64,000 bases of DNA from Trichosphaerium sp. ATCC 40318 (Eukaryota > Protista > Tubulinea), in NCBI GenBank assembly GCA_038496445.1, contig JALMLS010000322.1, forward strand, positions 62,001-126,000, given 5' to 3'. Below are positions 55,521 to 63,559 of the stretch, one piece after another. The translations under genes and the position numbers were made by a program. The notes below the pieces were generated by a model, which worked only from the letters and a program-made list of their open reading frames with translations, searched no databases and was not told the origin of the DNA. The stretch's first letter is position 1; every line of letters begins with the position of its first letter.

Positions 55521-57159
55521 ATGTTACATTCCTCTCGATCAGTACAAAAGCTTACTACAAGGCTAAAACACCCAAAAGTATGCCTCTACTCTTTGCTAGC
55601 GAATTTCTGCTCTAAAACCCCTTCAGTTAGCGTATTTACCACCTCTGGAAGGCTACCTGTATAAATGGGATCAAAAATTACTATCATTTACAGATTGGCG
55701 TCGTTTATGGTTCTGCCTTGAAGGTAGGCAACTACTGGAGCATATTTCGACTATTCGTTCACATCTTCCTACCCCATTTTTCTTGGCGTACGCTAATTTT
55801 TTCTTGTAGGCGACAAACTGTTCTACTACCCCAATGACTTGGATTTGGAGCATTTAGGCCATATTGAGTTGCGATCAATAAAAGAAATAAAACATAAACC
55901 ATTCGGTAGAAGAAGTAGAGGAGGAGATGTACGCTCTACGCTCTAAAATTAAATTGATGGATTGTCATAAAAAAAAAAACTAATGACACGTTTTGTTCTC
56001 AAGTTTACGTTTTTAGGACGAGAAATGGATTATCGAGATTACTAGCGACTCGAAACCAGTGTATTTGAAAGCTAAATCAAAGAGGGATACAATAGCATGG
56101 ATTAAAGGGTTAAAAGTACGCCAACAAGAAAGAAAAACTTTCCAACTCCTTACACTCTTTTTTTTTTTTGTTTTTCTTCAGTGTTACTATTTTTTTGTTC
56201 TTTGATCTAATACAACCCTCTCTAGAAGTGGCATGGATTTTTTAAACAAGAGTGGGAAGAAGTACTGGCAAAAGATTTAGATGGTAATAAAAGTGGTAGC
56301 GATAAATCAAAGAGCGGAAGTGATGATTCATTGGTGTGTTTTTCTTCGTTTTTTCCTATTATCCTTATCCTGATGATATGGTAGGACAAGGATAAATTTG
56401 CGCGAGCAATAGAAGACGGACAACCGCCACTTCGTATGAAGGATTTGGAAGCCGGTAAGTCTTTTGTTGTGTACTTAATGTCATTGTCTTATTAACTCGC
56501 CTACAGAGCCAAGTGAGTCTGGTACAACTCTTCACGGAGTGTCTAATGACCCAAAAGAAACTATATCTATGCTCACAAGAAAAGTAAAAGACTTGGAAGG
56601 ACGCGTAGCCAGTGATATTTCGAAGCTGTCTGCTGTCAATATTCAACTAGAAAAGCTTAAACTAGAGCATATAGCACAGCGTAAACGTAGCGAAGAAGAA
56701 ATTCAGCAATTAAAACAGAAACTAGCGGATAGAGAAGCAGCTTTTGCAGCAAAGAATCTACAGCTTGAAAAGGATCTTGTACAGAAGGAATATGAAGCAA
56801 GAGCGTATTTTATGACAAGTGAAACAAAAGATGAAGAAATAGATAGATTAACAGCAAACATCGATTCTCTTACAAGCAAAGTTGCAAAGCTTACCGAGGC
56901 GTCATCAACAGGGTCTGATAATTTTTTAATGCCTTTCAAAGAGCGTATTCAAGGACTTCTTTTACAGTTAGAAGGTGCTGAGAAGGAGAACGCAGCTCTA
57001 AAAGTACGTTTAAAAGAGAAAACAGGTGAAGTAGTACAAACACGGAGATGGAGTTGTACTAAAGAGAGCATTGATGAAGTTAGCGCTTGGGCCAAAACTA
57101 CATCAAAACCAAAACCAAAGACTGTATCAGATGAAGCCACTAAAGTGGACACAGCATGA
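55521..57159 (+). CDS. PH-domain + coiled-coil protein (multi-exon)
   Basis: LEGYLYKW..DWRRLWFCLEG|DKLFYY..LGHIEL, YLKAKSKRDTIAWIKGL; long coiled-coil exon 56539..57159. Confidence 0.8.
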
Positions 57160-57399: not shown

Positions 57400-57456
57400 G
57401 AACCCTGGACCCCCGCGTTATTAGCACGGTGCTCTAACCAGCTGAGCTATACGACC
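57400..57456 (-). pseudogene. 3'-truncated copy of tRNA-Ile(AAU), broken in the T-loop
   Basis: Identical to 58519..58575 up to GGGTTC, then unrelated sequence. Confidence 0.9.
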
Positions 57457-58044
57457 ATATTTTGCTTATTAACTATCTCGTAAAAACTCGACCCAGTAGT
57501 TACATTGCAGCCAAATTGTCAGTCACCACCAAAAATAATGTCTCAGCAATGCAAACACCAACAGTAATTGATTCTCCCTTGGCTATTTGCACAAAGTTAC
57601 ACAGGAAAACAAAATTCCAGTGTCGACTTTTATGTTGGTAGCGTATTACTTGAGCTCGTTGTCGCACAAGTGTCAGTTATTGTAACGTTAAACAACACCT
57701 TACATATTACAATCCTCGTTTCATATGGGCCTGAATATTCGTAAATACTCAACCACCGCCATTCCAAAGTCGGCACAACAATGCAATTTTCAAGATATCA
57801 AAGGGTGGCTTGTTATTGCATCCAAGGTAAATTTATATATCTCAAATACCTCCAAAGAAATATGGGTGCTTTTATGCAAATAACAAAAAGCAGTATTGTA
57901 ATTGATGACTTTAAACTCAACAACCACAGAAGGTAGGACCTTATGCCATGGCAATGTTGGCCTCAATTGCGCGAGAGCGTTGCATATTCTTTGTGAAACA
58001 GCAATTGATAAGCATTGAAGATGGAGCGTTACTGGTCTAAAATA

Positions 58045-58323
58045 AGGTTGTGGTTCTATCGTGTACTTAGTTAGCATCCGCCTTTAGGTTATCAACCTGG
58101 CCTCTCACTGGTAATAAACGTTCCATACTCTTTAATAAGAGGCTCACTTATATGGAATGCCTCTTCATCTCTATCAATACTACATAAACATGACGTAAAC
58201 TACGCCGATAACATACCTAAGACGACTTTGGTGACCACCTGCACCAAACGTACAATCGACATATACACTTCCCTTACATGGTTGAAGTAACGATACAGAC
58301 TTGTTCACCAAAACTTGAGCATG
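58045..58323 (-). pseudogene. RsmH/MraW (METTL15-like) rRNA methyltransferase gene fragment
   Basis: HAQVLVNKSVSLLQPCKGSVYVDCTFGAGGH, intron, IDRDEEAF..KEYG; in-frame TGA just upstream, frameshifts downstream. Confidence 0.8.
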
Positions 58324-58518
58324 TCATTTTTGTCATCGTTTTTTTCATATTAGCATTACAATGCCAACTGCCATACTGTAAAACAAAGTGCTTTTGGATG
58401 TCAACAAATTTTGATATTAATTGCTCTAGCTAGACATTATTTTTGGTGGTGACTGACAATTTGGCTGCAATGTAACTACTGGGTCGAGTTTTTACGAGAT
58501 AGTTAATAAGCAAAATAT

Positions 58519-58592
58519 GGTCGTATAGCTCAGCTGGTTAGAGCACCGTGCTAATAACGCGGGGGTCCAGGGTTCGATCCCCTGTATGACCA
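58519..58592 (+). tRNA. tRNA-Ile (anticodon AAU)
   Basis: Full cloverleaf GGTCGTA/TATGACC, GCTC/GAGC, CCGTG-CTAATAA-CGCGG, CAGGG-TTCGATC-CCCTG; T-runs downstream. Confidence 0.97.
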
Positions 58593-58960
58593 ATAACCTT
58601 TTGCCTTTTTTCCTCTGCCTGTATAACTTATTTTACCTTCTATATCTACTATATGTATGTACTCTCTAGTATTTTATGCATATTATGTTGCTTTATCATC
58701 AAAAACGGTAGTCTACATGGGCCGTGATAGGGTCATTAAGTTTGTTTTTTCATGCTTTTCATGAAAAGCTATTTCTCCACTCAGCTGAGTCATACGACCT
58801 TTGTTACTGGTTCAACTGCCAACGCATTGGTTACTGCGCAAAAGCTGATTACAACAGAAGAGTTTTACATATATTGATTTGGCATGCTCTTTTAGTAATG
58901 AGGAATGAATGCGCTTTTGTGGCGAAATAGATTTATACTCTGAATTATGAAAGGTACCGT

Positions 58961-61900
58961 CTATTTGGTGGGTTTACCAAGTACAATACCCATACAAATT
59001 GTATGTGACTCATTGTCATCTTTACTTGCAGGTTTACCGTCATCGTGATATCTAGTTGTTTCAACAACCATACAATAGAATGTAACAAACACGCATACCT
59101 GCAAAGTTCTTTGAAACCAATCTTTTTATAGAAACGGAGTGCACGCGCATTATTAGAAGCCATTTCAAGATGGACTCCAGGAGAACCAGCTCCCATAAGC
59201 GCAAATAGGAGTTTGGTTATCATCGCTGTACCATTACCACATCCCTACAAGTTAAATCATTAGTGCCAAAAGCAAGTAAAAAAATAACGGAAGGCCAAGT
59301 ACCTGTGCACGTGGAAGCAAGTCAATATGCATGTGTGAAGGGTATGTGTTTTGTAGAAGGTCTGGAAAGAAGAAAACTGGATTATAAAAACTACGTATAA
59401 GGCCACCAGCCTCTGACGTATCATCCTCCTTAAACGAGTCAAACCAAAAAAGAACAAAAAAAGATTTTCGTTTTTGACTTTCTAAAGGCGTACTTTTGGT
59501 TCCTTGTACATTTTACGTAGTTTAGGAAGCCACGTATCGTGCATCTTTTGATAAAAATCCTTTGAATCCAAAGCTCCTATGAAGTATTAGAGAAAAAAAA
59601 CACCCTCAAGCTGATGACGGATTGGACGTACCTAATACATAGCCGCACACACCTTGATCATCTTTCTGATGTTGTGAATGTTAGAGATGTTAAAATCGTA
59701 TTTTAGTTACATACCAATAAGAAGGCAAACTTTGAAGACATGACTATGTAAGGACCAACATATCTTAAGAAAAATATTGTTAGAAAAGCTTGGATTTTCG
59801 TAATGACTTGCCTGTGACCTATTATCTTTGGGTCGTTAGGAAATAAGTGTGTACCATCATCACCACTATCCGCTGTCTTAAGACAAACGTTATAAGCGTC
59901 TAAAAGGTATTAATGGTACGCTTAAAAGAGCCGAGTACCATCTTCATATTTAGGCTCATAGTTAATTATTTCGAACTGGTTAAGAGTTTGTGCAGGTACG
60001 AAAGTAGCATCTGGTTTGTAAACAAGTAATGACTCGAGCCGTCTCAGAAATCCTCCACGGTAAGGACCTGGCCTTTAAATTTAAAAAAAAGGTAAGTACA
60101 AGATCAATCAAAGCACGTGCAAAGACATATGTAATACCACGACTATCAAATCCAAGAGTTCTCATTATTATAAGTTCTTGTTTCAGAAACATATTATGTC
60201 CACGTGGAGAAAAACAAAACCTACTTTCTTACCTATGAAATTTTGTAGAGAATTTTACTGATTTGCCTTCTTTTGCACGAGCTTGAACGTATTCAGCGAG
60301 AATATCAGCTTCTTCGGCAGCGTTCCAAAGGTATCTATACATTGAATACCTACAACTGTTAAAAACCTCAGGTGATGAGCATAGAAACACATACAATAGT
60401 TCTCTGTCTTTGAGGTATCCCATCTTATCGAATAACGCCCGAATTCTCTTACATAGCGCTACAAATGCGTCAAGCTTTGTGACTGTGTCTTTTGATGTGT
60501 AGTTACTATGAAACAATGGGTTAGATAGTCTGTTTAAAGAGATTGCTTACCTTGTGCCAAGTAGGAATTTTGCAGACGCCAGGAAGTCATTTACAAGCTT
60601 GCTTTCATTGTGAGGTAGGTAGAACAAAGAAACAAGAAGAACTAAGTCCTCTTTGGTTATTTGTTTCTTAGGCACAGAAGACGCAAAATGAGGTAGCCAA
60701 GAGTCCAGAGCTGTTTCAAAGAGGTTAGGATAATAAATTGTAGAGGATAGATTACCTTTATCAAGAGCAGCTTCGGGCGAGTAGTCAGACTTTTGTAGAG
60801 TTAGACAAACAACATTAAAATGCACGCACAGTTGATGCCCACGCACCCAAGGTGCATATAGGTACGTAATTCGCAACAAACTGGCAGTTAGGATTAATAA
60901 GCAAACCAGCAATCTCGTCCTTGATCGCGCTATCTCTATGAGCAAAAGGACCAAGGAATAGCCTATCTATAGCGTAATCATTGGCGTAGAACTAAAATAA
61001 AAACTAAGAATTCTGATGTTATTACATGAAAAAATAAAAAAGCGTTAAAAACGGACGTACGTTGTCCCAAAGCATTGGTTTGCGTTTGATGACTTTCCTC
61101 AGTTTGCGCATATCTTCGACAGTGGTCTCTTTATCGATAATCTCCTTGCCTAAATGTTTTATCAATAAAAATCATGTTTTTCGGCTGTTAATTTTCTTAC
61201 CTGTCCAAAGTACGTGGATGTTCTTTGCTAGGTTATCACCAACACAGCTTAAATAATCGTGTTTGGATACGTCGCCATCTGCCATTATCTCACAATAGGC
61301 AGTTGGGCAAAACAAGAATAACTGTGGTTTACTAGAACAGTTAAAAAAGAGGTAGATGTCTACTTGTATTGTACGAGTCCTTGCTTTCTGAAAGCTCCAA
61401 TGCCTTCAATACTTCGTTAGTAAAGCAGCACTGAGCCTGAGCCACTGACGAGTAGACTTTCTTGTCCTCTTCGCTCAGCGTAGGTTGGATATCATCCCAG
61501 AGAATAGCGTAATCAACACAACCAACTTGTAATAAAAAATTTAAAAAGAAGCTTCAAAAGGCGTTAAGAACACGTACTTGTGCGCAGCTGTGTTAGTTTA
61601 GCGATGGCTGCCTGAATATCAACGGTTGACGTGTGTGACACATCCAAGCCTGCCAAAAAGTGAGGAGAGGTAATCTAAGGTACTATACCGGGTGCCAGAG
61701 CATAAACAAAGTTGACACCTATGAAAGGTTACAACAAAGCGCGTTTCGCTAGATTTTTTGGTGTACCAGTTTTTTTACATTCATCTACCAACGCCTTGAG
61801 TGATTGAAGCTCGTTTGGCTCATACACTAAAAAATTAAAAAGCAACTAGCCGAAAGCCGGCGTACACATGCGCCACGTATTGCGGTGCTTATCATCGTCT

Positions 61901-62028
61901 TTTGGCGCGTACATAAAGCAGTTCAAGCTATTTCGCTTCATAGTGCTAAATAACTCAAATCTTTGTTCCTGGCGCCAAGGGCGACCATAGAAACCTTCAA
62001 TAACGCCACAATAAAAAGGATCGCTCAT
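58961..62028 (-). CDS. OGA: O-GlcNAcase (GH84) with C-terminal GNAT domain (multi-exon)
   Basis: [61 protein letters not shown]; C-terminal [27 protein letters not shown]. Confidence 0.93.
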
Positions 62029-62146
62029 CTTGATGAGTTAACGGCGAAAAATAAGCGTTAAAAACCGTAGAGCGGCTAATTCGTATGTAAAGTGCTAGTT
62101 TTATTCTCTGGTTACTAGTAAAAAGTCAGACGGTGTCTCTCTGTCT

Positions 62147-62545
62147 TTACTTGTCAGCTTTTTTGAGGTCTGCGCCTTTGGCTACCTCGCTGAGGAGACT
62201 CTTGTGCTCGTTCTTCTTAATCTTGACATCCTTATCGATAGCAGGAGCGGATTTGTCTGTGGTTTCGGCGTGTTTCAAATCAGAACCCTTGGCAACCTCC
62301 TTGAGGAAAGGATCGCGATCAACCTTCTTGATTTTTACGTCTTCTAAACCGAAGAAGTTAGTTTGGGAGTAAAATAAAACCAAACGCCGCTAGTACAACT
62401 ACCAAACGGCCGGCAAAGAACAGTGCTAAGTTAAGAAATACGTACTCTCAATCACTGGTTTGGATTTGTCAGTGGTTTCAGCGTGTTTTAGCTCTGGTTT
62501 GGCTTTGGCGAGTTCGGCTACGGCTTTGTCGTGTGCTTCAGTCAT
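62147..62545 (-). CDS. Actobindin (WH2/beta-thymosin-repeat actin-monomer binder; 1 intron)
   Basis: Repeats LKHAETTDKS (x2) plus LKKADK; strong codon bias. Confidence 0.9.
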
Positions 62546-63559
62546 TGTGAGAGTGGAGAGTTGTTGTGTTGCTTGTTATGTTTGGGCAAGAATGAATTGT
62601 TCAATGAGATTCACACAGACTTGTGAATCAGCAATGGCGCTTGTATCCTCCTTTTCTAGCTCCCGTGAGCCTTATAATTGCCATTACGAGGGCAAAAGAA
62701 AGGTGCAGTTTTTGGTGCGTGGGCGGTTTTTGTACGCCAGTTGTGGTATCCTTGCGAGTTGTTATGCGTTTTAGGTTTGGCATGTACAGAAAACCGCGAG
62801 CAAGTGACACATACAAGAAGCTATTTTTGCATTCCCTCAAACTTCAGGAGTTGTGCGTAAACGGTACTACCAATCTACGTTGGCAGCTTGAACGCGAAAC
62901 CAAATACGTACTGAATAGTTTAAAAACCCAATTGAGACTTTGTTTTTCACAATAGCGCCATTTAGCGCACTATTATGTACCACAACATTGAAAACTATCC
63001 CCTGGGCGAATTGGGAGCGTTCAACGTCTCCAACTTGCGTAATATTACCGATAGGCTGTGTACCACTACTACGTAGCGCATTTAGGTGTCAGTGTGAAAC
63101 AGAACAAAAGTCGACGAATCGGATAACTTTACTCCGCAATGCACTCGTACGTAATGTTATTACCTTCTTAGCGGCTTACGGCCAATAACGGTTTTGTAAA
63201 CGGTTTATTTTTCAAAAAACAATTTAACTATATCTGAGCGATACAAAGAGCGACACAACACCCACAAACGTCTTTTTGACTATTTTTATTTTATTTTTGA
63301 TCTGTGTTTAACAAAAACCTTCCTCTCTGCTTTGCACGTGTCTCAATTGCGTTGTAAAACTCTTTTTTGTTTGAAGTACCAAACAAAATAAAAAAATTCG
63401 CAGATTACTTTGTTTTTACATCAAAAGCTAATAATTGAGGCCTCTTTTTACACTTTTTTTTTGGTTTTATTCAAGTATTGTAAAATAGTATAAACGTGCG
63501 TAACCAAATAAAACTATTGGTTTGTTAAATTCTAGTTTGTTTGAATTGCAGCAACAACA

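What the first reader, a model, noticed from the sequence alone, without database searches (positions are those of the whole stretch)
59100..59345. O-GlcNAcase C-terminal GNAT domain retains an intact acetyl-CoA-binding motif
Seen: the spliced sequence [11 protein letters not shown]|[35 protein letters not shown] contains the canonical GNAT motif A Q/RxxGxG and NxxAxxFY. The GH84 catalytic DD (ILWDDI) is also intact. Known: metazoan OGA has a pseudo-HAT domain lacking this P-loop. Inference: a potentially true bifunctional O-GlcNAcase/acetyltransferase reflecting the ancestral state, in a protist where OGA is not generally expected.
Basis: partly seen in the sequence, partly recalled or inferred. 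Interest (0 to 1): 0.7.

Follow-up and report, generated by a model that had tools for sequence, protein, structure and literature searches.

The report
Protist O-GlcNAcase with intact acetyltransferase domain
A single-celled eukaryote makes a spliced mRNA for an O-GlcNAcase whose tail domain, a dead "pseudo-acetyltransferase" in humans, still has every acetyl-CoA-binding residue, so it may show what that puzzling domain originally did.

Summary
A minus-strand gene (62028 to 58961, 20 exons, 676 aa) encodes a GH84 O-GlcNAcase with stalk and a C-terminal GNAT domain.

The GNAT domain matches the bacterial AcCoA-binding enzyme OgpAT (3ZJ0; E 5e-40; model TM 0.92, rmsd 1.8 A) better than it matches human OGA. 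It keeps the OgpAT cofactor and candidate catalytic residues that human OGA has lost: Thr25, His135, the Q-G-x-G-x-G loop, Asn175 and Tyr182. The GH84 catalytic and sugar-binding residues are intact.

Four sponge OGAs, Thecamonas and several bacterial GH84-GNAT fusions keep the same motifs; the fish and hemichordate sequences compared here have lost them. So this is one member of an unremarked "live-looking" OGA class, consistent with the ancestral state.

[quoted passage not shown] AcCoA binding, the acceptor and the presence of OGT were not tested here. Fusion partners elsewhere and a published occluded acceptor pocket hint at a small or sugar-linked amine rather than histones.

I rate it a new variant of a known kind, interest about 0.6.

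The parts
58961..62028 (-). Whole coding region of the OGA-GNAT gene: 20 exons, 676 codons plus the stop at 58961-58963. There are 19 introns of 39-160 nt, all GT-AG except one GC-AG.
   Evidence: Exon table. Joints come from spliced transcript contigs. Exons 2-4 were inferred from length, open frame and homology. P0001 is identical from exon 4 onward.
60830..62028 (-). GH84 catalytic TIM-barrel region (exons 1-8, aa 1-286).
   Evidence: Pfam NAGidase PF07555. The best solved-structure matches are human OGA (exon 1, 64 bits; exon 8, 51 bits). P0001:1-345 scores 212 bits to human OGA against 173 to OgOGA.
61491..61496 (-). Catalytic Asp-Asp pair (D119, D120) in ILWDDI.
   Evidence: It aligns to LLFDDI of human OGA.
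60233..60789 (-). Stalk / helical-bundle region (exons 9-12), with the LFYLPH motif and without the long disordered insert of human OGA.
   Evidence: Second aligned stretch to the human OGA stalk.
58964..60072 (-). C-terminal GNAT (OgpAT-like) domain, exons 13-20, about aa 455-676.
   Evidence: P0001:370-589 against PDB: 3zj0 E 5e-40, 4bmh 8.5e-28, human OGA 3.5e-25. AlphaFold model pLDDT 95.4. Foldseek best match 3zj0, TM 0.83/0.92, rmsd 1.8 A.
59874..59876 (-). Thr480, equivalent to OgpAT Thr25. Human OGA has Met735 here, which was proposed to clash with pantetheine.
   Evidence: Alignments, column table, codon. Residue roles are from PMC3814719.
59303..59428 (-). Exon 18, ending [14 protein letters not shown]. 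His588 and His590 correspond to OgpAT His133 and His135 (candidate base), and Q598 is the first P-loop residue.
59245..59302 (-). Intron 18 (58 nt, GT..AG, phase 0), which splits the P-loop between Q598 and G599.
   Evidence: Skipped in contigs of runs X1, X2, X3 and X5. Absent from transcript contig L001 / protein P0001.
59099..59244 (-). Exon 19. It carries P-loop residues G599-C-G-N-G603 (59230-59244), helix alpha5, Asn630 (OgpAT Asn175), Tyr637 (Tyr182) and Lys639 (His184).
   Evidence: (3zj0 E 5e-8 for this exon alone).
58964..59051 (-). Exon 20, the last beta strands of the GNAT fold and the C-terminus (...[12 protein letters not shown]).
   Evidence: Modelled strand E213-219.

Best explanation
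This is an expressed nuclear gene for a compact (676 aa), cytosolic-type O-GlcNAcase of the eukaryotic OGA architecture: GH84 barrel, stalk, then a C-terminal GNAT domain. The GNAT domain is of the OgpAT type and looks cofactor-competent, not a pseudo-enzyme.

Shown:
- The gene model and the splice.
- Intact GH84 catalytic and sugar-binding residues.
- A confidently predicted GNAT fold closest to the OgpAT-AcCoA crystal structure.
- Conservation of every OgpAT residue that Rao et al. tied to AcCoA binding or catalysis, apart from one conservative His-to-Lys change.

Inferred: the N-terminal half removes beta-linked GlcNAc by substrate-assisted hydrolysis through D119/D120. The C-terminal half binds acetyl-CoA through the Q598-G-C-G-N-G603 loop, the beta4 backbone, Asn630 and Tyr637. 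It then transfers the acetyl group to an amine, with His590 as the likely base.

The acceptor is unknown. My best guess is a small polar or sugar-linked amine rather than a histone tail. The closest solved relatives have an occluded, tunnel-like acceptor pocket. The same GNAT family is also repeatedly fused or adjacent to sugar enzymes (ROK kinase plus SIS, sialate acetylesterase, DegT aminotransferase).

In evolutionary terms the gene represents the unreduced form of the OGA tail domain. Sponges and Thecamonas also keep this form, and the later-branching animals sampled (placozoan and bilaterians) have lost it.
For: - Splice and expression: four runs, three studies; independent transcript protein P0001, 100% identical.
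- GH84.
- GNAT identity: ([14 protein letters not shown] against [14 protein letters not shown] of 3zj0; 141 bits to OgpAT against 92 to human OGA).
- Key-residue table over 28 relatives. All non-bilaterian fusions keep T, H, H, D, Q, G, G, N, Y; fish and hemichordate do not.
- Family-wide near-invariant columns.
- Structure: pLDDT 95.4; Foldseek 3zj0 TM 0.92, rmsd 1.8 A, then 4bmh, then the Trichoplax pHAT 6r45.
- Constraint: all five differences within the GNAT domain between the window and other runs' transcripts are synonymous (6 of 7 overall).
- Residue roles and AcCoA binding by OgpAT and SsAT: PMC3814719, PMC3919268.
- Small-molecule acceptor hint: PMC3919268; fusion partners.
Against: - No biochemical test was possible, and an intact motif does not prove binding or turnover.
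- OgpAT and SsAT themselves have no known acceptor or demonstrated transferase activity; only AcCoA binding has been shown.
- Bartual et al. 2025 (PMC12494797) attribute part of the loss of binding in Trichoplax and human to structural features other than the motif.
- Position 600 is Cys where most relatives have Arg, Lys or Gln.
- His184 of OgpAT (3'-phosphate contact) is Lys here.
- I could not check whether the organism has an OGT, so a role in O-GlcNAc cycling, as opposed to GlcNAc scavenging, is unproven.
Confidence: 0.62

Rival explanations
1. The domain binds acetyl-CoA (or CoA) only as a ligand. It acts as a metabolic sensor or allosteric switch tuning the GH84 half, with no acetyl transfer. 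This is the reverse logic of fungal Ngs1, where GlcNAc binding switches on a GNAT.
For: The cofactor-binding residues are intact. No acceptor is known for any member of this GNAT subfamily (PMC3814719, PMC3919268). In human OGA the tail domain and its linker regulate the catalytic core allosterically (PMC12494797).
Against: Residues beyond the cofactor site are nearly invariant across the family. These include the candidate base His590, Asp592 and the CLxTGDxGxDGT loop lining the acceptor pocket. That pattern is more typical of a working active site.
Confidence: 0.15
2. Despite the motif, the domain is catalytically inert, as in animals. It would serve as a dimerisation or peptide-binding module for OGA.
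For: All seven animal pHAT domains tested fail to bind AcCoA, and they retain a peptide groove and form dimers (PMC12494797). The model also superposes well on the Trichoplax pHAT (6r45, TM 0.81/0.87).
Against: Those inert domains have lost the residues that are kept here. Mutating the OgpAT P-loop to the human sequence abolishes binding (PMC3814719), so the motif matters. Only synonymous changes were seen in the domain between runs.
Confidence: 0.1
3. The gene is not part of an O-GlcNAc cycling system. It is a GH84-GNAT fusion acquired from bacteria and used in GlcNAc or amino-sugar salvage from prey glycans. This concerns the cellular role and is compatible with an active GNAT.
For: Bacterial GH84-GNAT fusions exist, 37% identical over 96% of the protein: Verrucomicrobiae P0091 and operon-type contigs L002 and L003. 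The AU test does not reject this gene grouping with the bacterial ones (p 0.40). An earlier, unchecked note of this scan reports a bacterial-derived NagB-NagA fusion in the same genome.
Against: The best full-length tree puts the gene with all eukaryotic fusions against the six bacterial ones (95/95). GH84 plus stalk score higher to human OGA than to the bacterial OgOGA (212 against 173 bits). The gene has 19 spliceosomal introns and no signal peptide-like N-terminus, since the protein starts directly at the barrel.
Confidence: 0.25
4. The motif is an artefact of a wrong gene model, contamination or chance.
For: None found.
Against: The intron is removed in contigs of four runs and in an independent database transcript. 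The gene lies in a eukaryotic intron-rich context. The domain-wide E-value is 5e-40.
Confidence: 0.01

Closest known systems
OgpAT, Oceanicola granulosus putative acetyltransferase (PDB 3ZJ0; Rao et al. 2013, PMC3814719)
   Same: It is the best sequence and structure match to the tail domain (E 5e-40; TM 0.92; 38% identity). Both share the [19 protein letters not shown] segment, Thr25, Asn175, Tyr182 and the two family-specific insertions. OgpAT binds AcCoA (Kd about 8 uM) and is encoded immediately downstream of a GH84 (OgOGA).
   Different: OgpAT is a separate bacterial protein in an operon. Here the domain is fused to GH84 and stalk in one spliced eukaryotic gene. His184 is Lys and Arg145 is Cys here. 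The acceptor is unknown for both.
Human OGA / MGEA5 (for example PDB 5M7R) and Trichoplax TaOGA54 (6R45, 9QEN)
   Same: Same three-part architecture. GH84 and stalk are most similar to these (212 bits), and the DD motif and sugar-binding residues are conserved. The tail domain is homologous (92 bits).
   Different: The animal tail domains are pseudo-HATs. They have T-D-P-S-V-A in place of Q-G-x-G-x-G, Met735 for Thr, Lys844 for His and Asp884 for Asn, and show no AcCoA binding by SPR (PMC3814719, PMC12494797). The window protein keeps all of these residues. It also lacks the long disordered insert of human OGA.
Sponge OGA-like proteins (Amphimedon, Dysidea, Sycon, Corticium) and Thecamonas trahens 'histone acetyltransferase' (database entries P0108, P0109, P0092, P0120, P0118)
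   Same: GH84-stalk-GNAT fusions in eukaryotes with the same intact motifs, 44-46% identical in the tail domain.
   Different: They come from different lineages. The sponge GH84 domains group firmly with bilaterian OGA, whereas the window gene's position is unresolved. None is biochemically characterised, and I found no paper describing their intact motifs.
SsAT, Streptomyces sviceus GNAT (PDB 4BMH; He et al. 2014, PMC3919268)
   Same: Second-best match (E 8.5e-28; TM 0.89). It has the same P-loop and the HxHID segment, binds AcCoA (Kd 20 uM), and has an occluded acceptor pocket suggesting a small-molecule acceptor.
   Different: It is a stand-alone bacterial protein with an N-terminal extension and is not linked to a GH84 domain.
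Candida albicans Ngs1 (Su et al. 2016, PMC5063960)
   Same: [quoted passage not shown]
   Different: Per the paper, its N-terminal domain acts as a GlcNAc sensor. I recall it as GH3-like rather than GH84, which I did not check here. It is an analogue, not a relative that I tested.

Membership tests
GH84 O-GlcNAcase (OGA type) | GH84 (NAGidase, PF07555) TIM-barrel domain | tested here: met
   Pfam PF07555 on exons 1, 6 and 8 and on P0001 (E 5.8e-39). PDB hits to human OGA.
GH84 O-GlcNAcase (OGA type) | Catalytic Asp-Asp pair and GlcNAc-binding residues (human G67, K98, Y219, W278, N280, D285, N313 equivalents) | tested here: met
   ILWDDI has D119/D120. [31 protein letters not shown] and NPN align residue for residue with the human sequence. 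The human residue numbers are from my own knowledge of the family.
GH84 O-GlcNAcase (OGA type) | Helical stalk following the barrel | tested here: met
   A second aligned stretch (query 226-328) matches the human OGA stalk, including LFYLP.
GH84 O-GlcNAcase (OGA type) | Hydrolysis of O-GlcNAc from nucleocytoplasmic proteins, paired with an OGT (GT41) in the same organism | not testable with these tools
   Only this window is readable. A search of the scan's notes for OGT/GT41 in this genome found nothing, which is not evidence of absence.
GNAT acetyltransferase, OgpAT/SsAT subfamily | Motif A P-loop [Q/R]-x-x-G-x-[G/A] at the start of helix alpha5 | tested here: met
   Q598-G-C-G-N-G603 aligns with OgpAT Q143-G-R-G-V-G148. 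The helix begins right after it in the model (H151-165).
GNAT acetyltransferase, OgpAT/SsAT subfamily | GNAT fold with the two subfamily-specific insertions | tested here: met
   Model pLDDT 95.4. Foldseek 3zj0 TM 0.83/0.92, rmsd 1.8 A over 216 columns, against TM about 0.55 for ordinary GNATs.
GNAT acetyltransferase, OgpAT/SsAT subfamily | Other AcCoA-contact and candidate catalytic residues of OgpAT (Thr25, His135, Asn175, Tyr182, His184) | tested here: met
   T480, H590, N630 and Y637 are conserved. His184 is Lys639, a conservative change shared with most relatives.
GNAT acetyltransferase, OgpAT/SsAT subfamily | Binding of acetyl-CoA and acetyl transfer to an acceptor | not testable with these tools
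   This needs ITC or SPR and enzyme assays.
Metazoan OGA pseudo-HAT (pHAT) | Degenerate P-loop (human T852-D-P-S-V-A857) with loss of Thr25, His135 and Asn175 equivalents | tested here: not met
   The window protein has the canonical residues at all of these columns, while fish P0104 and hemichordate P0094 do not. By sequence it should not be filed as a pseudo-HAT.

The most novel reading that the evidence does not exclude
The OGA tail domain began as a working acetyl-CoA-dependent N-acetyltransferase mechanistically coupled to the GH84 half, and this protist still runs the coupled reaction. GH84 hydrolysis needs the substrate's own 2-acetamido group. The GNAT could therefore re-acetylate de-N-acetylated (GlcN) residues or free amino sugars so that they can be cleaved or recycled. 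That would make the enzyme a two-step editor of GlcNAc modifications, linked to acetyl-CoA levels. Sponges, Thecamonas and bacteria would share the activity, and animals that branch later than sponges would have lost it.
Probability: 0.12. Interest if true: 0.85.

Novelty: new variant of a known kind. Interest (0 to 1): 0.6.

Why it matters
The purpose of the HAT-like tail of O-GlcNAcase has been argued over for twenty years. It was first reported as a histone acetyltransferase, then shown to be a dead domain in every animal tested. The current literature states that eukaryotic OGA tail domains cannot bind acetyl-CoA and that OGA is an animal-specific gene.

This gene, and the sponge and Thecamonas relatives that surfaced with it, show that neither statement holds at the sequence level. 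There are eukaryotic OGAs in which the cofactor site and the putative active site are fully preserved.

These proteins are natural, compact (676 aa) test objects for two open questions: what the ancestral acceptor was, and why hydrolase and acetyltransferase were linked. They also place the loss of the cofactor motifs inside the animals, after the sponge lineages split off. In addition they raise the question of reversible O-GlcNAc cycling outside animals.

Tried and rejected
- **Exon-only searches.** Exons 13 and 14 alone gave nothing or only a weak hit against PDB. Single short exons carry too little signal.
- **Word-index search.** It cannot reach full-length relatives from an exon because of its length window. 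I therefore used the one representative search on exon 19 by reference. It returned P0001, the database copy of this very protein, which then served as the reference for the spliced product.
- **Organism name.** Run and organism names are coded, and the protein occurs only on an unnamed JGI transcript contig. Earlier scan notes call it an amoeba, and one hints at a heterolobosean-like mitochondrial editing system. I did not verify either.
- **Vertical descent versus bacterial transfer.** The GH84-only and GNAT-only trees leave the gene unresolved on a long branch. The full-length tree favours a eukaryotic group, but AU tests reject neither alternative.
- **OGT in the genome.** Not possible beyond a word search of scan notes.
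- **Literature.** Searches for O-GlcNAcase together with Amoebozoa, Amphimedon, Thecamonas, Porifera or protists found no description of an intact tail domain. The library is incomplete, so this is not proof that no such description exists.
- **Last word search.** Run from the Amphimedon tail domain, it added only one more sponge. No cnidarian, ctenophore or choanoflagellate sequence was recovered, so the point of loss within animals is bracketed only by sponges and Trichoplax.
- **Joined spliced model.** One local script concatenated exons 1-5 in memory only to test candidate exon sets for an open frame. Other scripts looked up single codons from the exon table.
Full report
**What is there.** The finding lies in the 3' part of a minus-strand gene. 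Six-frame reading shows GH84-like pieces from about 62030 downwards and a GNAT-like end near 59000. Laying public runs on 58900-62100 gave spliced contigs in four runs from three studies. Nineteen joints were reported, 15 of them listed, and all listed ones are CT..AC on the plus strand (GT..AG on the minus strand) except one GC..AG.

After correcting the ambiguous cuts, and inferring three short exons between 61526 and 61865 from the known transcript length, an open frame and homology, the model has 20 exons and 676 codons. Introns are 39-69 nt, with one of 160 nt. The stop codon is at 58961-58963.

The representative search with exon 19 alone returned P0001. This 589-aa protein comes from an independent JGI transcript contig (L001) and is 100% identical to the model from exon 4 to the end. 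It reads ...[27 protein letters not shown]... So the observation and the splice are confirmed.

L001 keeps the 39-nt intron 3, which explains why P0001 starts in exon 4.

**The hydrolase half.**
- Exon 1 ([11 protein letters not shown]...YAPKDD), exon 5 (ILWDDI) and exons 6-8 (FCPTAYC, LWDNFYANDY, NPN) hit Pfam NAGidase.
- They align residue for residue with human OGA.
- The barrel plus stalk score 212 bits to human OGA, 193 to Trichoplax OGA, 173 to the bacterial OgOGA and 55 to Bacteroides GH84.
- The stalk aligns too, but the long disordered insert of human OGA is missing.
- The protein starts directly at the barrel with no leader, so a cytosolic or nuclear location is inferred.

**The tail domain.** P0001:370-589 matches OgpAT (3ZJ0) at E 5e-40 (141 bits) and SsAT (4BMH) at 8.5e-28. 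Human and Trichoplax OGA come only third, at about 1e-25 to 1e-22.

The alignment to OgpAT is almost gapless, which allows a direct read-out of the residues Rao et al. (PMC3814719) identified.

| OgpAT residue | This protein | Human OGA |
|---|---|---|
| Thr25 | Thr480 | Met735 |
| His133 | His588 | Leu (alignment) |
| His135 (candidate base) | His590 | Lys844 |
| P-loop Q143-G-R-G-V-G148 | Q598-G-C-G-N-G603 | T852-D-P-S-V-A857 |
| Asn175 | Asn630 | Asp884 |
| Tyr182 | Tyr637 | Tyr891 |
| His184 | Lys639 | not compared |

An AlphaFold model built on a 58-sequence alignment is very confident (pLDDT 95.4, pTM 0.90). Its best Foldseek match is 3ZJ0 (TM 0.83/0.92, rmsd 1.8 A), followed by 4BMH and then the Trichoplax pHAT 6R45. 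Ordinary GNATs follow at TM about 0.55.

Seven single-base differences separate the window from transcript contigs of other runs. Six are synonymous, including all five inside the tail domain. The sample is small, but it fits purifying selection.

**Relatives.** The word-index searches with P0001 and the representative search recovered three sets.

1. GH84-GNAT fusions with the same motifs:
   - four sponges: Amphimedon, Dysidea, Sycon and Corticium;
   - the apusomonad Thecamonas trahens, annotated 'histone acetyltransferase';
   - single-gene transcript-like contigs (P0028, P0093, P0107);
   - bacteria: a Verrucomicrobiae MAG, and operon-type contigs L002 and L003.
2. Bilaterian OGAs (fish, hemichordate) that have lost the motifs.
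3. The same GNAT family either alone or fused to other sugar enzymes: GKRP-type SIS plus ROK sugar kinase, a SASA sialate acetylesterase domain, or a DegT aminotransferase.

A column table over 28 sequences is clear-cut. Every non-bilaterian fusion keeps T, H, H, D, Q, G, G, N and Y, and the two bilaterians keep almost none.

**Evolution.**
- In the GH84 tree the sponges group with bilaterian OGA (100/99).
- In the tail-domain tree the bilaterian pHATs sit next to the demosponges on long branches.
- The motifs were therefore lost inside the animals, after the sponge lineages split off. Trichoplax already fails to bind AcCoA (PMC12494797).
- In GH84-only and GNAT-only trees the window gene sits on a long branch whose place is unresolved. 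Its nearest neighbours are two unnamed transcript proteins.
- In a full-length tree of 16 fusions, the six bacterial sequences are separated from all eukaryotic ones, including this gene, by a 95/95 branch.
- AU tests reject neither 'this gene plus animals' (p 0.43) nor 'this gene plus bacteria' (p 0.40).
- 'Ancestral state' is thus the better-supported reading, but an old transfer from a bacterial fusion is not excluded.

**Mechanism proposed.**
- Shown: an intact hydrolase site and an intact, OgpAT-like cofactor site in one spliced protein.
- Inferred: the tail binds AcCoA as OgpAT and SsAT do (Kd 8 and 20 uM) and transfers acetyl to an amine, with His590 as base.
- The acceptor is open. He et al. 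describe an occluded, tunnel-like pocket suited to a small polar molecule.
- The loop CLxTGDxGxDGT that lines the pocket is nearly invariant whatever the fusion partner, and the partners are sugar enzymes.
- I therefore favour a small or sugar-linked amine over a histone tail.
- Rivals are a ligand-sensing role without transfer, an inert scaffold as in animals, and, for the cellular role, GlcNAc salvage rather than O-GlcNAc cycling.

**Comparison with the literature.**
- Selvan et al. [quoted passage not shown] - Bartual et al. [quoted passage not shown]
- I found no paper in the held library describing OGA in amoebae, apusomonads or sponges, or an intact tail domain in any eukaryote.
- The sequences are in public databases but are not remarked upon.
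- The fungal protein Ngs1 (PMC5063960) is a working precedent for a GlcNAc-binding glycosidase-like domain coupled to an active GNAT, but it is an analogue.

**Limits.**
- I did not establish the organism's identity. 'Amoeba' comes from earlier unchecked notes of this scan.
- I had no access to the rest of the genome, so OGT was not sought.
- There is no biochemistry.
- The contigs laid on the gene cannot show minor isoforms or expression level.
Exons were searched by reference, and the spliced product was represented by the database protein P0001.

**Verdict.** It is right about the intact motif and the likely ancestral character. It is too broad about 'metazoan' OGA and about the rarity of such genes, and the enzymatic claim is still untested. 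I rate it a new variant of a known kind, interest about 0.6.

Noticed in passing
P0108, P0109, P0092, P0120 (database proteins; not in the window): OGA-like proteins of four sponges (Amphimedon, Dysidea, Sycon, Corticium) keep the full YPSHLHID..RAQGxGxG and CLxTGDxGxDGT motifs that bilaterian OGAs have lost. Their GH84 domains group with bilaterian OGA. The loss of the cofactor site therefore happened inside the animals.
   Followed up: partly
P0073, P0016, P0025, P0029, P0065 (GKRP-SIS + ROK + GNAT); P0080 (SASA + GNAT); P0116 (GNAT + DegT); L002:434-4766: The OgpAT-like GNAT family recurs fused or adjacent to sugar-handling enzymes: SIS/ROK kinase, sialate acetylesterase and DegT aminotransferase. 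One bacterial contig has GH84-GNAT, an MBL-fold gene and DegT in a row. This suggests an amino-sugar-related acceptor.
   Followed up: partly
window 61650-61688 (minus strand); L001:1-116: The JGI transcript contig L001 retains the 39-nt intron 3, which carries an in-frame TAG. The contig of run X1 has it spliced out. This is either intron retention or unprocessed RNA.
   Followed up: partly
window about 62150-62560, minus strand: Directly upstream of the OGA gene is an open frame with three LKHAETTDKS-type repeats resembling beta-thymosin/WH2 actin-binding motifs. It has no Pfam hit at E 0.001.
   Followed up: no
window 58518-58593 (+) and 57400-58592: A tRNA-Ile(AAT) gene lies about 370 nt beyond the OGA stop codon. 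It is inside the inverted repeat that another first-stage note of this window describes.
   Followed up: no
window 56539-57159 (+): A 206-aa coiled-coil-like open frame with a weak Tup_N match (E 1.7e-4, below the Pfam cutoff). I did not check whether it is a single-exon gene.
   Followed up: no
window 59764-59811 (minus strand): The intron after exon 14 uses a GC donor (GC..AG). It is the only non-GT donor among the 19 introns, and the joint is supported by contigs of X1 and X2.
   Followed up: no
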